Part shown: positions 14,580-27,113 of the stretch, piece by piece
How the letters are laid out: each line of letters starts with the position of its first letter
Position numbering within the stretch: position 1 is the first letter of the stretch
From: Haliotis rubra
Lineage: Eukaryota
Length of the DNA stretch: 64,000 nucleotides
NCBI RefSeq assembly: GCF_003918875.1
Contig: NW_025766978.1
Coordinates: 248,001-312,000, forward strand
Direction: 5' to 3'
Program-made: the position numbers and the translations under genes
The notes under the pieces: generated by a model
Database searches by the model: none
What the model was told of the DNA's origin: nothing
Seen by the model: the letters and a program-made list of their open reading frames with translations, nothing else

Positions 14580-14638
14580 GGCACCCGTGAAGGGCCACCT
14601 CCTCGTGGTGGGTGCTGGGTCACGCTAAGAGCCCTTCA
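14580..14638 (+). ncRNA. HDV-like self-cleaving ribozyme at the LINE 5' end
   Basis: P1 GGCACCC(14580-86)/GGGTGCT(14610-16) with G1-U wobble; P2 TGAAGGGC(14588-95)/GCCCTTCA(14631-38); P3 ACC/GGT with loop TCCTCGT; P1.1 CC/GG; J4/2 GCTAA with the catalytic C at 14625. Confidence 0.85.
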
Positions 14639-15215
14639 ACCCCCGTTGTGGGCCCGGGGGATATTAGGTCCACCAACCCGTTTGCCGTGGGTTGCGCCCT
14701 GTGTCGGTGGAGGACGGGATTCTGGTGGTTGAGGGCAAGGGCTCCAGGAACAGCGTTCCTTTGCCCAATACACCACTTCGACCCTTACTTCACCTAGACG
14801 GGTGGTTGAACTGGCCCGGTTCAACCAATCGGCTGGTCACGTCATGCCCTGTGCATGGTAAATATATTATTTGCACATATACTTATTTTTGGGCTTTGGA
14901 TATTTTGATCCTCAATATACAAATTATTCTTATGTTGCATTGCCTAGAGTCCTATGCCAGAAGGCGGTGGCTCATGGGCCAATCTGGTGATGTTGACCGC
15001 TGAATTCTGTGTGTCTTTAGATTTTTGTTTTGGGCCGAACCAGCTTGACAACTGATCTATTTGACAAATATAGCTATTCATGTCATATTTGCTGGAGTAT
15101 GACACCCCTGTATCCCTGGTGTTAGCATCCTGGAGATCCGGTGCGAATCGACCCCGTCCTTGTTGACACTCCATGGTGGGTGGGGAACAGGGGTGTTGAA
15201 ACATTTCCTTTCATC

Positions 15216-16459
15216 ATGGCACTATTACATTCTGGTTCATCTCGTAGTGAGAAGAAAAAGGCGTTTTGAGGATTTTTAGATCCTTCAAATGGAAGCATTA
15301 CTCCAAACAATGATTCTTGGGCTCGATTTTTGTGTGATCGAGGCTGCTGATTTTTACCGATCAAGCTTAACCCATTCGCTGTTTCAAAGGCTATATCTGG
15401 GATTTGTGGTGAGGTTAACAACGTCACCCGGCTCCGTACTGGTTCACTTCTTGTGGACTGTGCACGGAAGCAGCAATCTCTAAATTTGTTATCGATCAAA
15501 ACATTTGCAAATGTTGAGGTTGCTGTGTCGGTGCACGGGACACTGAACTCTTAATCGAGGCATTGTTCGTGACGGGGCTCGTTGCCTGTCCGACATGTCT
15601 GAAGAGGAAATCAGTGCGGAGTTGAAGGAACAGGCGGTAACAGCAGTTAAACGCTTCACAATAAAGAAAGATGGTATTACCGTAAATACCAACACGTATC
15701 TCATGACATTTGCTCGTTCTACCCCTTCCAGCATCAATCAAAGCAGGTTATCTCAATATCGGGTGGAGGTGTATGTCCCGAATCCTCTCCGATGCTACAA
15801 ATGTCAACGATTCGGCCATGGTTCCAACTCATGTCGAAACTCTGTGGTTTGTTATCGTTGTGGTGACAACCACGAGGCACTGACTGCAAGAAAGACTTCA
15901 GATGCTGTAATTGCGATGGCACCCATGCCGCATCATCAAAATCTTGCCCTGTATGGCAACGAGAATCTAGCATCATGAAGGGTGAAATGCCATAATAACA
16001 TATCTTTACCTTGAGGGCAAAGAAGCTGTTTTACGACACAGTCAACAACTCCATCGATGATAACTTATTCTGCAGCAGTGTCTCGATCTATGACAACGTC
16101 ATCTGTATCTTGTCAAACCGACTTGACTTGGATCCGGACTGAACAACCTGTTGCTTCAGCCGCTCCACCAAAATCCCCAGTCACTCAGTCAACGTCTGCC
16201 TCTCAGACAGAGAGTCAGCCTGAGATACCCCTCACAGATGTCTATTAAAGCAGCCAGTTCCTATAAACTCAACAAAAGGAAAGCACAGAGGAAAAAACAG
16301 AATAGAAAAGAATCAATCACGATCCCTTCATCTCCAGAGGTTACTTTACAGAACTCCTTTGAATCTCTTGACATGGAGGTTACTCTGTCCTCCCAGGACA
16401 GGCGGAAGAATAGTTCTTCCTCACATTCACGTGAAAGATCGCCCGTTGAACCACCATGA
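15216..16459 (+). pseudogene. LINE ORF1 (gag-like nucleic-acid-binding protein), frameshifted
   Basis: KLNPFAVSKAISGICGEVNNVTRLRTGSLLVDC; YVPNPLRCYKCQRFGHGSNSC; CYRCGDNH zinc knuckles; stop overlaps the ORF2 start (ATGA, 16456-16459). Confidence 0.85.
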
Positions 16460-19400
16460 CACAGTTGTCACATATCCTGCAGTGGAATTGTAGAGGACTG
16501 AAAATAATTTCAGTGAAATGCAATTGCTGATACAGGACTTTCAGCCAGCAGCGTTATGTCTCCAAGAGACATATTTAAAACTACTGATGCCTTTACTTTG
16601 AGACAGACAGTACAGCGATTTTCATTCTTTTCTCCTCCGGGAGATCGAGGCAACTGGAGGCGCTTCTATTTTGGTTCACCAGAGCGTCATACACAGCCCT
16701 GTCACTCTAAATGCGAATCTTCAGAGCTGTTGCTGTGCGTCTCACTTTGCACATTGCTCTGACATTGTGCAGCTTGTATATCCCTCCTTCTTCAAATATT
16801 CAACAATCCGATCTTCAAAATCTGTTTGATCAACTTCCGAAGCCATGTCTCATCATGGGCGATCTGAACGGTCACAACCCGCTTTGGGGAAGTGACCATA
16901 TTAATACTAAAGGTAAAATCCTTGAGGAATTTATTTCCGATAATCACCTGTGTATATATAACGATGGTTCTCCCACTTATCTACATCCAGGTACGGGAAC
17001 ATATTCTTCCCTGGATCTGTCAATTGCCGACTCCAGCTTGTATAATGAATTTGAATGGTTGGTCCATGACGACCTATGTGGGAGTGATCACTTCCCCACC
17101 ATTCTCAAAACAGTCAACCCTGGTGATGATCCACCTTTATCGAGAAGGAACTTTGCCAGGGCTGACTGAATCATTATTGAGACTCTGTGTGCTGAACAAT
17201 TAACTCATGATCGGTTTAGCAACAGTGAAGATCCTATTCAGTTGTTTTCTGATATCCTTAATGGCATTGCTGACAGAACAATTACTCAGTCCTCTGCGGT
17301 TCCACATATTCGTAAACCATGGTTCAATAACGAATGTAAACAGGCCAGAAAGTGTAGGAAGAAAGCAGAAAATATTTTCGCCGACATCCTACTGTCCATA
17401 ATTTAGATAAATTTAAAATGTTAAATGCCAAGGCGCGACGCAGTTTTAAACAGAATAAGCGTCAGTCTTGGCGAAACTATGTTTCAAAATAAATTCTCGA
17501 ACACCGATGTCAAAGGTGTGGAACATGATCAAAGAATAAAGGGCAAAGGTTCCAAATCTACCGTTCATCATTTAAAGGACGGTGATAATTTGTTAACTGA
17601 TAAGGCTGACATTGCAAATAAGCTTGGTGAAACTCTCGCCAAACATTCGTCTTCGTCCAATTATGTCCCTGAGTTTCAAAAACATCAGAAACAACAGGAG
17701 AAGAAAGAATAAATTTTACATCAGACAATGGAGAAGACTACAATGAATTATTTTCAATGCATGAGTTACGTACTGCCCTTGAGCAAGCTCATGATACAGC
17801 AACAGGAGCTGATAATATACACTATCAGCTCTTGAAACATTTACCTGATTCATGTTTGGAAACACTTTTAAATATTTTTGATACAATATGGAGTTCAGGA
17901 AATTTTCCAACTTCGTGGCGTAAAGCCATAGTAGTACCTATACCAAAGCCTGGCCGGGATCATACAGATCCGTCTAATTACAGACCAATCTCTTTAACGA
18001 GCTGCGTCTGTAAAACCATGGAACGAATAGTAAATAATAGATTAACATGGTATCTTGAAACCAATCAGCTCATAACAAATATTCAATGTGGTTTCAGGAA
18101 AAATCGTAGTACCATTGATCATTTGGTACGTTTAGAATCCTTTGTAAAAATGCTATAATAAATAAACAACATGCAGTATCGATATTCTTTGATCTTGAGA
18201 AAGCATACGATACCACCTGGAAGCATGGCATTTTGAAGGATTTACATGATTTTGGTTTAAGGGGTCGTTTACCTCTTTTTATTCACAGTTTTTTTAACCG
18301 ACAGGCAATTTCAAGTCCGAGTGGGTTCAACCCTGTCTGACCATTACAATCAGGATCAGGGTGTCCCACAAGGCAGTATTTTGTCTGTCACTTTATTCAA
18401 CATTAAGATCAACAGTTTATCCAAGGTTTTAAACGATTCCATTGATGGATCACTTTTTGTGGATGATTTTAACATTTCTTGTCGCGGTAAGAATATGCAT
18501 ACTATTGAACGCCAACTGCAGTTGTGTTTAAATAAAATAAATAAATGGTGTCTTGAAAACGGCTTTAAATTTTCTAAATCAAAAACTAATTGTCTACACT
18601 TCTGTAGAAAATATAAGCCTCATAAAGACCCAGAACTGTTTTTAAATGGCACTCCCATCAAGGTTGTCAAAGAGGCCAAATTTTTGGGTCTGATTTTCGA
18701 CTCCCATTTAACCTTTCTTCCGCATATTAAATCCTAAAACTAAATGCCTGAAGGCACTCGATTTATTGAAAGTCGTGTCTAATTCAAGGTGGGAAGGGGA
18801 TCAAACTACGCTCCTACACCTTTACAGATCACTTGTCCGCTCGAAGCTTGATTATGGCTCCATCGTATATGGTGGAGCCTGCACAAGCAACTTAAAACTC
18901 TTAGATTCAGTCCACCATCAAGGTCTGAGACTTTGTCTTGGGTCTTTTAGAACTTCTCCTATTGATAGTCTCTATGTTGAGGCTGATGAGCCATCCCTTA
19001 CCCAACGTCGTATCAAACTCTCTTTACAGTATATAACAAAACTCTATTCTAACGAGTCTAATCCTGCATTTAACTGTGTTTTCAATCCTTCTTATGAGGA
19101 GTTGTACAACAAAAAGCCTTCTCTTGTTCCGCCTCTTGGTTTAAGAATTAAACCATTTCTTTCTGCTGCCGGCATTGAGCTGGAAAATATAGCTCCTTCC
19201 GTCTTCTTTCTTCTCCGCCTTGGCAATTGGTTTAGGCCACAAGTTGACCTAACATTAACTACATTTAAAAATCAGAAACAAATGAATTACAGTATAAACA
19301 AGAATTTAGTCAATTAAGAAATAAATATAATACATACAAATCCTTATTTACAGATGGGTCCAAGGATGGTGGCGCAGTGGCATGTGCCACTGTCATTGAA

Positions 19401-20142
19401 TCAGAACAATATCTTCTAGAATACCCGATAACAGCTCTATATTTACAGCAGAAACCAAACGCCATATTAACGGCTCTTAAATATATTCAAAGACATCCTA
19501 AACATAAACAGTACATAATCTTTTCCGATTCCTTTCATGTCTTCAGGCTATTAAAAATATTTCTTGTAAACATCCACTTTTATTAGACATTATTGAATTG
19601 TATAATGAGCTTGCTACTGGCCCAGTGCGACATCGTCTTTTGTTGGTTACCCAGCCACGTTGGCATTTCTGGGAATACCATGGCTGATCTTGCTGCCAAG
19701 GCAGCACTCAACAAATCTGTGACACCACTTCTTATTCCATACTCTGATTATAAAGCTGGCATTAGAACTTACATCCGTGATCTGATGCAGAAGAAGTGGG
19801 ACGCCCAAGTAGGTATTAATAAGTTACATGCAATAAAACCCTATATTGGTTACACCTACTTGGGTTGTCAGTCCAGATTTGAAGAGGTCATTATGCGAAG
19901 ATGTCGCATTGGCCATACCAGATATACTCATGAATATTTATTGAAAGGCGAAGATCCTCCGTTTTGTATCCCTTGTGATGAAAGGATCACAGTCAAGCAT
20001 GTCCTGATTGACTGCATTAGAATATTCCGTCACAAGGGATAAGTATTTTAATGTCAAAACATTGAAGGATCTTTTTAATAATGTTCGTTCTCATTTAGTT
20101 ATTGCCTTTTTAAAAGAATTAGATTTATTAACAGATTTGTAA
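16456..20142 (+). pseudogene. LINE ORF2 (AP endonuclease, reverse transcriptase, RNase H), frameshifted
   Basis: ILQWNCRGL; GDLNGHNPLWGS; SDHFP; NYRPISLTSC; QGVPQGSILS; FVDDF; FTDGSK; CWLPSHVGISGNTMAD; CIPC...TVKHVLIDC; split over many ORF-track pieces by single-base indels. Confidence 0.93.
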
Positions 20143-20694
20143 ATAGCTAAATATTTTATGATTGGAAGTTCAATTAGTAACACAGATTGTTAGTGGCTGT
20201 ATCCTCGAGGGGGGTTAAAGTACTGTAAAATTATTGTCCTCCCGAGAGGGTACATAAGTCCCAAAACATTCAAAGTACATTTCAACTTTCCATTTTTTAA
20301 TCGTAGAATATGTGTAATTTTAACGTATGGCTAGATTTATCTCAATTGCTAACAGCTGAAGGGATGATGTGAATCCAGCTAGGGCCCATGCAGGAAGCAA
20401 ATGTACTGTAAGTCCCCATGGTCTCTAGTATGGTGATCTAACTTCAGTTGTTAGCGATCTATAGCCCATTTTTATATTGTGTTGTCCCCTCTAGTTAAAA
20501 TGTTTTAGATTCAATTACTAGTTTTACATGTATATCTGTGATAATCTAGTTGTTTTACTGTCCTTCGTCGGCAGAATTTTATCATTTCACTTAAATTGTT
20601 GATAGATTTATAACTTGCTTTAGTCACGATATGGCTGAAATATTGCCGATGTGACTTAAAATCTTAACTCACTCACTCACTCATTTCCATGGCT

Positions 20695-22467: not shown

Positions 22468-22601
22468 TATAATGGCGTAGTCATGGTGGCCCTACTTTCC
22501 GGCATTCTTGATATTCATATGTTATATTTGGGATTGCACTTTCTGAGTAAAGTGCGGATTCTAGTACCTTTGTCTTTGGTTGAGTCCCATCAGGGATTCG
22601 A

Positions 22602-22845
22602 GTGAGTGAGTTTAGTTTTACGCCGCACTCAGCAATGTTCCAGCCATATGGCGGCGGCCTGTAAATAATCGGGTCTGGACCAGACAATCCAGTGATCAAC
22701 AGCACGAGCATCGATCTGCGCAATTGGGAACCGATGACATGTGTCAACCAAGTCAGCGAGCCTGACCACCCGATCCCGTTAGTCGCCTCTTACGACAAGC
22801 ATGGGCCACTGAAGATCAATATTCTAACCCGGACCTTCACGGGCA
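22602..22845 (-). mobile_element. SINE without a tRNA head, LINE-related tail
   Basis: 14-bp TSD catcagggattcga at 22588-22601 and 22846-22859; mollusc-type core catgcttgtcgtaagaggcgactaacgggatcgggtggtcagg; tail atatggctggaacattgctgagtgcggcgtaaaactaa(actc)n. Confidence 0.9.
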
Positions 22846-23110
22846 CATCAGGGATTCGAACCCACACCCACTTTCTAAAGTGTCATTGTGTATTTATTCA
22901 ATGTTTTTGCATATTCTTCTCAGATTGCTGGGAGTAAATTGCTATCACATTTCAATTTTGTTGTTGTTGTTTTTGTTGTTGTTGTTTTTCACTCAGAGCA
23001 AACTATGTTACAGTTACGATTTCAATACGTGGAATGTTTCGAAGAATGTACATCAACGTGTAGTGGTTTCGTACGTATCATATACAAAATGGGTGGTGCT
23101 TGATTCTTGA

Positions 23111-24450: not shown

Positions 24451-25509
24451 CATATAACGCTGGATGCTGATGATGACATCGAGGCTCCATGAGGAACCCG
24501 TGCATAATGAACACACAATGTTCGGCAAACCAGTGATACAGGCTCTGACAAAGTCTCCGAAGAACAACCTTCATGGTAAACCAGAATACTAGTATCCCAT
24601 TCCAAACGGAATTTCCTCAGCAGGAATAAGGGGTCAACAAGGTGTCATCATGCTCTATCCGTTGCCCTTAGTGTAATGACATGTTGTATTGTGTGCATCT
24701 TGGTATAGTATATTCCAGTTACAAGATGTGTCTTAAGTTTAAAAACGTTTGCAAATGTTTCAATGTGAAATACCGGGAAAGATCATTTGGTACCCGAGGA
24801 AATACCTTGTGGGGTACCTGCAGCTTTGTTGAAGGATTTGGATAACATCGTAAACGTCACTCCATTTCATTCCAGACGTGTTGCAGGTTATACTACACTA
24901 AATGAGAATCGCTTGCTCACTGAGCGAGAAGCGTATGTAAACAAATGAAGAGATAGAGACATGTGACAGCTGTGATTGGATGAAATAGTGTAAGATGTTT
25001 ATGTTTTTTAAAAGCATATCCAACCAGCAATTAAAACTGACCACAATTTTAAGTATTCAGTGCTGTGATTTTCATCACCATGACTTATGCTTATTGTGTG
25101 TACAGATATTTTCCAGTAGGTGACATTTGGTGCGGATCTGGGGTTGATGTGTTCCGCTTCCTGTGCTCGCAAAACAAGCCGGACAAGTTGGCCAGATGGT
25201 GTGTTTTATGGTAGTTTAAAGGCCATAGTGTACCCATGTGCACATGGAATGGCTGTTGATAGCCTGGATTATTTTAAAAAAAATATAAGGCTACTATAGA
25301 AGTCTATGGGAAAACATTTGGTGGTGTGTAACCTGCATGGGTGACAAATCAGGCAACCTACGGGCCAGGGTCACACATTCAGATTGTTCTGATTAAGATA
25401 CTGCTGAACAACGGGGCAAGTTTTACATTAATAATAAAGAAGTTGTATATCGATACAACTCTCCCCACAGTTGACCACACCAACTTCTAAATGCCACTCC
25501 AAGAAGTGA

Positions 25510-25644
25510 GTGAGTTAGTGTGGTTTTACGCCGCTTTTTAGCAATATTCCAGCAATATCACGGCGGGGGACACTAGAAATGGGCTTCACACATTGTACCC
25601 ATGTCGGGAATCGAACCCGGGTCTTCGGCGTGACGAGCGAACGC
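25510..25644 (-). mobile_element. 5'-truncated tRNA-derived SINE
   Basis: B-box ggttcgattccc on the minus strand; tail gatattgctggaatattgctaaaaagcggcgtaaaac...actcac; 13-bp TSD ctccaagaagtga at 25497-25509 and 25645-25657. Confidence 0.9.
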
Positions 25645-27113
25645 CTCCAAGAAGTGAAGACTACTTATATAAAACTCGGGCAACCTTGGATATGGTTGTG
25701 TTGAGGCGTCACTCCATTCTGTGTCGGTAGAGCGACATTATGCAAAACAGTTCAAGTTGCCGTCAGTCACAATCACTGGTGCACACACCTACAGTTGTCT
25801 TGTACACGCCCAAACAGATTAATATCAGCAATCAGACAGAGATTACAGATGGGCATGTATTCAATGACAGAATGCTCACGGGCGCCACAGTATGCGCCAC
25901 ACTATGCTGTATTCACGGTTAACTAAGCATCACGTCTGCAGATCATGTTCGTGGACAATTATACTTGATCATGATTGGACTACCCAGGTGGTGGTCAAGT
26001 CCCTACCTTACAGCTCAATGTGTGACACCAGACTTGAAGCGGATGCAGATGACCTCATTAGCCTTCGATATATTGAAATACCCCTAACTACACAGAATTG
26101 ATGTCATAGCTGCTATATACCTGGACAGCCCAAATTGATTTAAATCAAACCACGATGTACAACAAGCATTTCCTTCACAAGCACGTACTGCAAGTCGATC
26201 CTCCAGAAGTGACTCTTTGCAATCTAATCCGAACTTTTTCCTCGAGGATGTATTCATTCGCTTGGCTCTGAACAAGGCGTAACTTTTACCATAAAGTAGG
26301 GCCTGTGGCAAGAATTTGATTAATTAGTTCTTACGAGGAATTTGTCTCTCAAGCGCCTTTCAAATCTCCTTGTCAATACCGCAGACGATACGAGATCGAA
26401 TTTACAATGGGAAAAAATGAACAGAAAAAACTCGAAGTGGTAAAACTTGTTGAGTAAGTTATTCTCGCGGGCTGCGAGTGCCTCAAAAGCCGGCGTGTTT
26501 GCCATAGGTTTTTTTCTTACATGCGGAGTGATAATCAACACGAATGCAGCTACATTACTGTGGAGAATAGCAATAAAAAGTATTACGTGTCTGCCAAATA
26601 ACTTACGTAAATCGCTATATTCATCCTCTTAACACGTTTCCTGTCTTTTTTTCAAAAGTCATTAAAAATTCAGTTCAATTCAGCGTGTGACTTCACGCAT
26701 GCATGTATATGTCTCTAAGTGATTTTATGGGAATAGTTTTATACCGCAAGAACTTTAGAACTATTACAATAGCAATTAAACCATTGCTTTGCGTGCGAAC
26801 ACACGCCTACTCCTCGTCGAGTAGGTGACTCGTCTTGCAAGTTGCACTATTTTACAACGCTCTGAAGGGTCCCAGCCAGTTGGTAATTTGGGTTTATTTA
26901 TTTCAGGACTTTGAGATCCATCGATCACTTAAATGACTGTTCTTTTTCAGAGTGCGACTTGGCATGGTCGGAGTTCTATTGTACAATGCGGCGCCAGGCA
27001 CGATACACTCACTTTGTGTTCTGGAGAGGCGGAAGCAAGGGTAGAGAAGTACATGCCCACCTTTGTAGTGACTCTCTGGTGGCGTCACTGATATGGGCAA
27101 TCCATTCATAATA

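What the first reader, a model, noticed from the sequence alone, without database searches (positions are those of the whole stretch)
22810..22845. SINE head is a pseudoknot resembling the LINE ribozyme with its catalytic core deleted
Seen (minus strand): GCCCG-TGAAGGTC-CGGGT-TAGAATATT-GATCTTCA. GCCCG/CGGGT (opening G-U) and TGAAGGTC/GATCTTCA form an H-type pseudoknot. It shares cccgtgaagg and the downstream cttca, plus P1/P2 topology, with the LINE ribozyme, but has no P3/L3/P1.1 or GCUAA. No A/B box is visible and the TSD abuts this end. Inference: a non-autonomous element with both ends related to the LINE (analogous to trypanosome RIME/SIDER) that keeps a non-catalytic 5' pseudoknot, perhaps for exonuclease protection, ORF2p recognition or as an RT stop. 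This would make a ribozyme-LINE / pseudoknot-SINE system.
Basis: partly seen in the sequence, partly recalled or inferred. Interest (0 to 1): 0.85.

Follow-up and report, generated by a model that had tools for sequence, protein, structure and literature searches.

The report
Dead-ribozyme head of an abalone SINE
A short jumping gene with more than 20,000 copies in this abalone genome starts with a cut-down, inactive copy of the self-cutting RNA that heads its partner long jumping gene; elements headed by partner-derived sequence are already described in abalone, but what the head is made of was not known.

Summary
On the minus strand, 22844-22810 reads GCCCG-TGAAGGTC-CGGGT-TAGAATATT-GATCTTCA. 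It is the first 35 nt of a ~245-nt SINE with an (ACTC)n tail and a 14-bp TSD.

The family has more than 20,000 copies. Their 5' ends pile up at (G)ACCCGTG, with unrelated flanks, and no tRNA, 5S or ribozyme model matches.

The head aligns to the HDV-like ribozyme of the Nimb-like LINE in this window (14580-14638) at 25/30 to 26/32 identity. There are two deletions. One removes P3-L3-P1b and the other removes the catalytic C, so the head cannot cleave itself by the HDV mechanism.

P2 is kept through compensatory changes. The P1 core (CCCG/CGGG) is invariant and therefore unproven.

The SINE's last ~50 nt match the LINE's 3' end. The LINE also carries a second core-less pseudoknot of the same topology at 14639-14673.

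However, SINEs with LINE-derived heads (LP-SINEs) were described in Haliotis in 2016, and this scan has already noted the head on other DNA of this genome.

The function of the head, and how the exact 5' end is made, remain open. My best guess is that it is an RNA signal used by the LINE machinery.

The parts
22810..22844 (-). SINE head pseudoknot candidate: P1a 22844-22840, P2a 22839-22832, P1b 22831-22827, L3 22826-22818, P2b 22817-22810
   Evidence: Sequence. Family-wide conservation. P2 pairing counts. Alignment to the LINE ribozyme with the core deleted.
22782..22809 (-). 3' part of the ~60-nt head unit (GTGGCCCATGCTTGTCGTAAGAGGCGAC; consensus GYAACCC...), including the small hairpin GTCG/CGAC
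   Evidence: It aligns with LINE nt 14674-14700, the flank 3' of module 2. The 60-nt head unit behaves as a discrete block in tandem arrays.
22602..22844 (-). Whole SINE copy (~243 nt) with body and (ACTC)n tail
   Evidence: In the whole-genome search the top 40 copies are 94-100% identical over query positions 3-247. Junctions are shown.
22846..22859 (.). 5' copy of the target site duplication tcgaatccctgatg. It holds a B-box-like GGTTCGAATCC that belongs to the target, not to the SINE.
   Evidence: The same 14 nt recur at 22588-22601.
22588..22601 (.). 3' copy of the target site duplication
14580..14638 (+). HDV-like ribozyme at the exact 5' end of the Nimb-like LINE (P1 GGCACCC/GGGTGCT, P2 TGAAGGGC/GCCCTTCA, GCTAAG)
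   Evidence: Rfam RF02682 scores 25.9 bits, E 0.18, below the gathering score. All of the roughly 35 listed LINE copies start at GGCA. P2 covaries GGGC/GCCC against GAGC/GCTC across 100 listed copies.
14639..14673 (+). LINE 'module 2', a second core-less pseudoknot candidate of the same topology: P1 CCCCCG 14640-14645 with CGGGGG 14655-14660; P2 GTGGGCC 14648-14654 with GGTCCAC 14667-14673
   Evidence: It is preceded by the ribozyme in about 97 of 100 listed copies. A model built only from SINE heads hits it at 18.5 bits, E 0.004-0.007.
20629..20683 (+). LINE 3' end and (ACTC)n tail, similar to the SINE's last ~50 nt
   Evidence: blastn 82% over 51 nt, E 5.7e-7. Sequence.
14580..20683 (+). Degraded Nimb/I-like LINE copy, the presumed partner family
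   Evidence: Pfam hits on ORF pieces: a weak, below-cutoff zinc knuckle (zf-CCHC, E 0.01), an endonuclease, a reverse transcriptase in two pieces and a weak RNase H.

Best explanation
The 35 nt are the start of a ~60-nt LINE-derived head of a very abundant abalone SINE of the published 'LP-SINE' kind.

The head descends from the HDV-like ribozyme that heads the co-resident Nimb-like LINE. It keeps the inner part of P1a, J1/2 and both strands of P2. It has lost P3, L3, most of P1b, P1.1 and the catalytic C. It therefore cannot cleave itself by the HDV mechanism.

What remains can fold as a P2 hairpin whose loop (CGGG) can pair with the 5'-terminal CCCG, giving an H-type pseudoknot. The same core-less architecture is also present in the LINE just 3' of its active ribozyme.

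Inferred, not shown: the fold works at the RNA level as a 5' signal for the LINE machinery, in RNP assembly, in the second-strand or 5'-junction steps, or in protecting the 5' end. On this reading the SINE mimics both ends of the LINE RNA. How the SINE RNA obtains its exact 5' end is not explained by this reading.
For: Identity and copy number.

Fixed 5' end with TSDs and unrelated flanks.

No small-RNA head.

Head against ribozyme:
- 12/13 identity in the first 13 nt, matched by 30 of 1e6 shuffles.
- 26/32 identical with two deletions, z 7.6.
- Natural sequences give 25/33 (z 4.9) and 25/30 (z 3.8).

3' end shared with the LINE.

P2 is maintained:
- 93.8% of cells are paired, against 27-45% when the partner is slid, and 4 pairs change on both sides.
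- SINE subfamilies run A-U, G-U, G-C at one pair and keep a purine opposite U at another.

The LINE has its own core-less pseudoknot, conserved in about 1,800 copies and never at a 5' end. This argues that the architecture has a use other than defining an end or cleaving.

Literature: LINE-derived heads are reported in Haliotis SINEs (PMC4758252).
Against: No experiment or RNA read shows the fold or any function.

The P1 core never varies, and its outer pair is A opposite G in a large subfamily.

P2 complementarity is inherited from the ribozyme. The counted double changes come mostly from two lineages.

About 15% of copies with C in P2b carry an A-C mismatch.

Nested folding energies are not unusual.

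The precise 5' end needs a promoter or a processing step that this explanation does not supply.

Identity with the published Hdi_LP consensus could not be checked, because the figures are not held.
Confidence: 0.6

Rival explanations
1. The head is a DNA-level internal promoter taken from the LINE. This is the 'LINE promoter' idea of Matetovici et al.: Pol II starts at its first base, and the RNA fold is incidental.
For: The 5' end is precise, and new copies must often be transcribed to give successive subfamilies. G is enriched just before ACCCG, which could be cap-derived: 22/68, p 0.024, and about 66 of 100 in one subfamily. ACTAAA sits before the tail, as noted for LP-SINEs (PMC4758252).
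Against: In the LINE, the homologous sequence is a ribozyme whose job implies read-through transcripts. LINE module 2 never marks a 5' end (about 97 of 100 preceded by the ribozyme). Paired changes in P2 point to RNA-level constraint, not to a protein-binding DNA site. No Inr or DPE-like match was evident by eye.
Confidence: 0.15
2. The head is a functionless relic. A LINE 5' fragment with a chance deletion was fixed in a master copy, the stems are left over from the ribozyme, and a few master loci with outside promoters make all the RNA.
For: P1 shows no covariation and its outer pair is lost in a big subfamily. A-C mismatch sub-subfamilies exist. Folding energy is not unusual.
Against: The head is kept at full length in all subfamilies down to 75% identity. 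P2 changes are pair-preserving across subfamilies. The LINE keeps a separate core-less pseudoknot of the same design.
Confidence: 0.15
3. The head descends from LINE module 2 (14639-14673), not from the ribozyme. This is the reading of earlier notes of this scan.
For: Semi-global alignment of the 60-nt head to module 2 plus its flank gives z 5.1-6.0. MAFFT aligns them with 11 invariant columns. A model built only from SINE heads finds one LINE module 2 at E 0.004-0.007. The topology is the same.
Against: For the pseudoknot proper, module 2 gives z 0.8-1.3 against 4.6-7.6 for the ribozyme. SINE nt 14-61 alone are not significant against the LINE (z 1.6). The ATATT shared with module 2 is a derived insertion of the youngest SINE subfamily. 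The composite of ribozyme minus core plus the flank 3' of module 2 scores 39.9, against 20.1 for module 2 plus flank.
Confidence: 0.15
4. The head is the 3' half of a tRNA-derived SINE head (variable loop plus T arm with a B box), and Pol III transcribes the element.
For: GAAGATCCGGGTTAGAAT resembles the T-arm region of the tRNA-derived SINE at 25508-25650, GAAGACCCGGGTTCGATT. There are 328 copies reading GGTTCGA.
Against: There is no A box and no upstream tRNA part in any copy. ARAGORN and the Rfam tRNA model are silent. TTAGAAT, not TTCGAAT, is the state in old and young subfamilies. No T stem can form. The ribozyme alignment accounts for the same letters.
Confidence: 0.03

Closest known systems
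[quoted passage not shown] 2016, Genome Biol Evol, PMC4758252), reported in Littorina, Haliotis diversicolor/midae, Ostrea, Saccostrea and scallops
   Same: TSD-flanked short retroposons with tandem-repeat tails. [quoted passage not shown] There is no tRNA head. ACTAAA sits before the tail repeats. The genus is Haliotis.
   Different: The paper proposes a promoter and gives no RNA fold. It mentions the L1Tc ribozyme only as an analogy. Here the LINE partner is in the same window, its 5' end is an HDV-like ribozyme, and the SINE head is that ribozyme minus its core. Identity with the published Hdi_LP consensus could not be checked.
L1Tc/NARTc, ingi/RIME and SIDER of trypanosomatids (Pr77 hallmark; PMC3185411, PMC4035085)
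   Same: Autonomous and non-autonomous elements share a ~77-nt 5' module that is an HDV-like ribozyme. Some lineages have lost activity.
   Different: Most Pr77 copies in non-autonomous elements keep the whole fold and cleave, and Pr77 is also a proven promoter. Here the core is cleanly deleted in every SINE subfamily, and the body is unrelated to the LINE.
R2 SIDEs of Drosophila (internally deleted R2 derivatives). This comparison is from my own knowledge; no paper was read here.
   Same: Non-autonomous elements that keep both the 5' ribozyme region and the 3' end of their LINE.
   Different: SIDEs keep an active ribozyme, which they need in order to be cut out of the rRNA co-transcript.
HDV-like self-cleaving ribozymes at LINE 5' ends (R2, RTE, L1Tc) and twister variants on Perere-3 (PMC8501958)
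   Same: A structured RNA sits at the very 5' end of a retroposon, with the TSD abutting it. The order of the P1 and P2 strands matches the HDV fold.
   Different: There is no P3/L3, no P1.1 and no catalytic C, and no covariance-model hit. It fails the family definition.

Membership tests
HDV-like self-cleaving ribozyme | P1 helix of about 7 bp that starts at the cleavage site | tested here: inconclusive
   Only 4-6 pairs are possible (CCCG/CGGG core, plus A-U and an optional G-U). The RNA start lies at the base of this short helix.
HDV-like self-cleaving ribozyme | P2 closing the nested double pseudoknot | tested here: met
   An 8-bp P2, 7 of 8 pairs identical to the LINE ribozyme variant. 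Pairing is kept.
HDV-like self-cleaving ribozyme | P3 with L3, and P1.1 | tested here: not met
   There are 0 nt between P2a and P1b. The 20-nt stretch holding P3-L3-P3'-P1b is absent in the alignment.
HDV-like self-cleaving ribozyme | Catalytic C in J4/2 (GCUAAG in the LINE) | tested here: not met
   The C falls in a 3-nt deletion. L3 reads UAGAAU(AU)U with no C.
HDV-like self-cleaving ribozyme | Match to an Rfam HDV-type covariance model | tested here: not met
   There is no hit at E<=10 on the SINE alone. The LINE ribozyme gives 25.9 bits.
LP-SINE (LINE-derived head) | Short, TSD-flanked, tandem-repeat tail, LINE-type 3' end | tested here: met
LP-SINE (LINE-derived head) | First ~70 bp homologous to the 5' end of a Nimb-type LINE 5' UTR | tested here: met
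   The LINE domains are those of an I/Nimb-like element.
LP-SINE (LINE-derived head) | Sequence identity with the published Haliotis Hdi/Hmi_LP consensus | not testable with these tools
   The figures and supplements of PMC4758252 are not held.
tRNA-derived SINE (SINE2) | tRNA-like head with A and B boxes | tested here: not met
   ARAGORN finds 0 genes. There is no Rfam tRNA hit. Only a B-box-like 8/11 motif is present, with no A box and unrelated upstream flanks.
H-type RNA pseudoknot | Stem 2 (P2) supported by covariation | tested here: met
   One search gives 4 pairs with changes on both sides and 93.8% of cells paired. These reflect few independent events.
H-type RNA pseudoknot | Stem 1 (P1) supported by covariation | tested here: inconclusive
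   The core is invariant in the SINE and the LINE. The outer pair is A-U, G-U or A opposite G depending on subfamily.
H-type RNA pseudoknot | Fold demonstrated by probing or structure | not testable with these tools
   Needs SHAPE/DMS or a solved structure.
Internally deleted LINE derivative (SIDE/NARTc type) | Body as well as both ends derived from the LINE | tested here: not met
   Only the last ~50 nt and the head match the window LINE. The ~130-nt body gives no blastn hit.

The most novel reading that the evidence does not exclude
The dead-ribozyme head may still direct formation of the exact 5' end. In this reading the precursor is cut at the base of the shortened P1 by something acting in trans: the LINE's ribozyme or RNP, a host RNase that reads the P1/P2 coaxial stack as a tRNA-like helix, or an unrecognised minimal catalytic fold. 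That would make a split or trans-processed ribozyme system between a LINE and its SINE.
Probability: 0.08. Interest if true: 0.85.

Novelty: new variant of a known kind. Interest (0 to 1): 0.5.

Why it matters
LP-SINEs were reported as the only SINEs headed by LINE sequence, with an unknown function and an unknown polymerase. This locus shows what the head is in abalone: the LINE's HDV-like ribozyme with its catalytic core cleanly removed. The element has nevertheless produced more than 20,000 copies.

Two points become testable:
- Whether the P1/P2 scaffold of these ribozymes has a second, non-catalytic role in retrotransposition. The LINE's own extra core-less pseudoknot hints at this.
- How a retroposon with neither a Pol III head nor an active ribozyme obtains a precise 5' end.

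Tried and rejected
- Rfam at gathering score on the whole window: nothing. At E<=10 on the SINE alone, only a chance snoRNA-like match. At E<=10 on LINE nt 14630-14830, only noise.
- tRNA origin: rejected (see rival explanations).
- 5S rRNA origin: a resemblance recalled from memory, with no support from the 5S model. Dropped.
- A complete HDV-like fold using downstream SINE sequence (P1b at CGGGT about nt 73, P4 at GTCAG...CTGAC): no P2b partner and no C-N-R-A could be found by eye. Dropped.
- Twister or other ribozyme classes: no Rfam hit.
- Mid-session reading that the head is the homologue of LINE module 2: weakened. Kept as a rival.
- Viral contigs: two exact patterns gave 0 hits. A looser pattern gave 25 hits, none with a P2 stem, so these are chance.
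- A SINE with an intact ribozyme head: all 100 listed ribozyme copies run on into the LINE 5' UTR.
- LINE copies that start at module 2: about 3 of 100.
- RNA evidence: only assembled contigs are available, with no raw RNA reads. Depth and ends are therefore uninformative about transcripts.
Later sampling used the listed pattern matches only.

Full report
**What is at the coordinates**

It is the start of a ~243-nt element that ends in (ACTC)n.

The element is flanked by the 14-bp duplication tcgaatccctgatg at 22859-22846 and 22601-22588. One extra t lies between the duplication and the head. The GGTTCGAATCC just upstream is part of the duplicated target, not of the element.

**Family and 5' end**

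The genome (1.38 Gb, 2,855 contigs) holds thousands of copies. The best 40 are 94-100% identical and all begin at query positions 3-6.

Copy counts by head type:
- The head motif CCGGGTTAGAATWKTGATCTTCAG occurs 11,576 times (up to 2 mismatches), against 0 for the reversed control.
- Heads with CCTTCAG in P2b add 3,472 matches.
- The older CAGC type adds 5,471 listed matches.

Evidence that 5' ends pile up at ACCCG:
- Of 27 full-length copies listed from 30 loci chosen only by position on contig 1, 25 start at ACCCG or a one- or two-letter variant of it. TSDs are recognisable in about 16 and end 0-3 nt before it.
- Copies of 75-88% identity start at the same place, and their upstream flanks are unrelated to each other.
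- In contigs of a run from another organism, similarity stops at 22843 in 335 contigs, with no consensus beyond it (agreement 0.38).

The family consensus opens with A, so P1 is ACCCG/CGGGT. The G of the window copy is a private change.

G is enriched at the position before A. It is found in 22 of 68 held copies (p 0.024) and in about 66 of 100 in the CGGGGTAGAATAGG subfamily.

**No small-RNA head**

ARAGORN finds no tRNA in the window. Rfam gives no tRNA, 5S, 7SL, snRNA or ribozyme match on the SINE at E<=10.

The loop holds GGGTTAGAAT, which matches 8 of 11 positions of a B box. There are 328 copies reading GGTTCGA. However, TTAGAAT is the state in every subfamily seen, and no A box or T stem exists.

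**The LINE**

At 14580 (+) a ~6.1-kb degraded element begins with GGCACCCGTGAAGGGC...GCTAAGAGCCCTTCA. It gives the only HDV-type Rfam signal in the region: RF02682, 25.9 bits, E 0.18, below the gathering score.

All of the roughly 35 related copies listed start at this GGCA. Across 100 listed copies, its P2 exists in two covarying forms, GAAGGGC/GCCCTTC and GAAGAGC/GCTCTTC.

The ORF pieces carry a weak, below-cutoff zinc knuckle, an endonuclease, a reverse transcriptase and a weak RNase H. That is the I/Nimb-like build.

The element ends at about 20683 with an (ACTC)n tail. Its last 50 nt match the SINE's (82% over 51 nt, E 6e-7).

**Head against ribozyme**

- The first 13 nt of the older SINE consensus (ACCCGTGAAGATC) are 12/13 identical to the GAAGAGC ribozyme variant, at the place of P1a, J1/2 and P2a. 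Only 30 of 1,000,000 shuffles reach this anywhere in the ribozyme.
- P2b (GATCTTCA) is 7/8 identical to GCTCTTCA.
- With a score that tolerates long gaps, SINE nt 1-33 align to the ribozyme at 26/32 identical with two gaps (z 7.6, 0 of 1000 shuffles).
- The first gap is 20 nt and covers P3, L3, P3' and P1b. The second is 3 nt and takes out the C of GCUAAG.
- That test used a ribozyme in which I had changed the two P2 strands to the listed variant. With natural sequences only, an old SINE copy against the window ribozyme gives 25/33 (z 4.9). The window SINE against the window ribozyme gives 25/30 (z 3.8, 5 of 1000 shuffles).

**A detour: LINE module 2**

Just 3' of the ribozyme, the LINE has ACCCCCCG TT GTGGACC CGGGGGG ATATTA GGTCCAC (14639-14673 in the window copy). 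This has the same strand order as the SINE head and also lacks a core.

For a time I read the SINE head as its homologue, as earlier notes of this scan do. The evidence for that reading:
- Semi-global alignment of the 60-nt head to this region gives z 5-6.
- MAFFT aligns them.
- A covariance model built only from SINE heads finds one LINE copy at E 0.004-0.007, with the LINE stem placed in the SINE's P2.

The evidence against it:
- For the pseudoknot proper, module 2 scores z 0.8-1.3 against 4.6-7.6 for the ribozyme.
- SINE nt 14-61 alone are not significant against the LINE (z 1.6).
- The shared ATATT is a late insertion of the youngest SINE subfamily.

The best composite is LINE nt 4-57 minus the core, followed by LINE nt 94-121, the flank 3' of module 2. 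It gives 45/59 identical and scores 39.9, against 20.1 for module 2 plus flank.

I therefore take the head to be ribozyme-derived. I regard module 2 as a second core-less unit of the same design. Common origin of all three by tandem duplication and core loss is possible but not shown.

Module 2 is preceded by the ribozyme in about 97 of 100 listed copies. So it does not create a 5' end in the LINE, either as a promoter or as a ribozyme.

**Is the fold real?**

For P2, on a stem-anchored alignment of 9 SINE and 7 LINE module 2 variants:
- 93.8% of cells pair, against 27-45% when the partner is slid.
- 4 of 8 pairs change on both sides.
- These reflect few independent events: mainly the two lineages, plus A-U to G-C within the SINE.

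Within the SINE, subfamilies carry GAAGATC/GATCTTC, GAAGATC/GGTCTTC, GAAGGTC/GATCTTC, GAAGGTC/GACCTTC and GAAGGTC/GGCCTTC, among others. All are pair-preserving, with a purine always opposite U6. However, about 15 of 100 copies with C in P2b have an A-C mismatch.

For P1, the core (CCCG/CGGG) never varies. Its outer pair is A-U, G-U or A opposite G depending on subfamily. P1, and so the pseudoknot, is compatible with the data but unproven.

The geometry is classical for an H-type knot: a 7-8-bp stem 2 with a 0-2-nt loop 1 and a 6-9-nt loop 3. That judgement is from general knowledge. Nested folding energies are not unusual.

**What is known**

Matetovici et al. 2016 (PMC4758252) described 'LP-SINEs'. 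These are TSD-flanked SINEs in Littorina, Haliotis diversicolor/midae, oysters and scallops. Their first ~70 bp resemble the first 68 bp of Nimb-17_LMi and of two other LINEs.

The authors proposed a promoter and left the polymerase open. They cited the L1Tc Pr77 promoter/ribozyme only as an analogy. No RNA fold is proposed for the head. The ACTAAA they note before the tail repeats is present here.

I could not compare sequences, because no figures or supplements are held. The trypanosomatid Pr77 elements (PMC4035085) are the nearest functional parallel. This scan has also noted the head on other pieces of this genome.

**Mechanism**

Shown:
- LINE-derived head and tail.
- A deleted catalytic core.
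- A preserved P2.
- A fixed 5' end.

Inferred: the scaffold is kept because the LINE machinery uses it at the RNA level. The reasons are that the LINE keeps a separate core-less copy, that the SINE also mimics the 3' end, and that changes in P2 preserve pairing.

Open: how the 5' end is made. A promoter, a host nuclease or trans cleavage cannot be told apart without RNA 5'-end data. Only assembled contigs were available.

Noticed in passing
L027:924-1457; also G000 C8:71357-72343, C7:60556-60694, C1:6287946-6288889 (seen in lists only): The ~60-nt SINE head unit alone forms tandem arrays. In L027 there are 8.9 copies of a 60-nt unit at 96% match. Elsewhere the spacing is 50-52 nt. The head behaves as a discrete, satellite-forming block.
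   Followed up: partly
window 14639-14673 (+): A second core-less P1/P2 pseudoknot candidate lies directly 3' of the LINE's HDV-like ribozyme. It is conserved in about 1,800 copies and is almost never found without the ribozyme in front.
   Followed up: yes
window 25508-25650 (-): A different, tRNA-derived SINE copy, 5'-truncated, with TSD cttcttggag. It has a canonical T arm (GGGTTCGATTCCCG) and the same LINE-type 3' end and ACTC tail. Two SINE types therefore use one LINE tail.
   Followed up: partly
G000 list; window 14587-14595 with 14631-14638: The LINE ribozyme P2 exists in two abundant forms that covary tightly, GAAGGGC/GCCCTTC and GAAGAGC/GCTCTTC, with only about 3 mixed copies in 100. 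J1/2 is G or A by subfamily.
   Followed up: partly
window 22600/22843 joint; flanks in L014, L034, L038, L048, L053: SINE copies often sit head-to-tail, or directly after another copy's (ACTC)n tail. 61 contigs of one run join 22843 to 22600. This suggests insertion into existing tails.
   Followed up: no
L052:2294-2565: A subfamily of thousands of copies (head CGGGGTAGAATAGGTCTTCAGC) has a ~24-nt internal duplication of ATGCTTG...AGGCGACTA just after the pseudoknot. It nearly always starts with an extra G.
   Followed up: partly
L063-L090 versus window 14580-16400: Several LINE subfamilies are 95-98% identical over the first ~280-320 nt (ribozyme plus 5' UTR) but only 73-77% identical downstream. 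This looks like exchange of the 5' module between LINE lineages.
   Followed up: no
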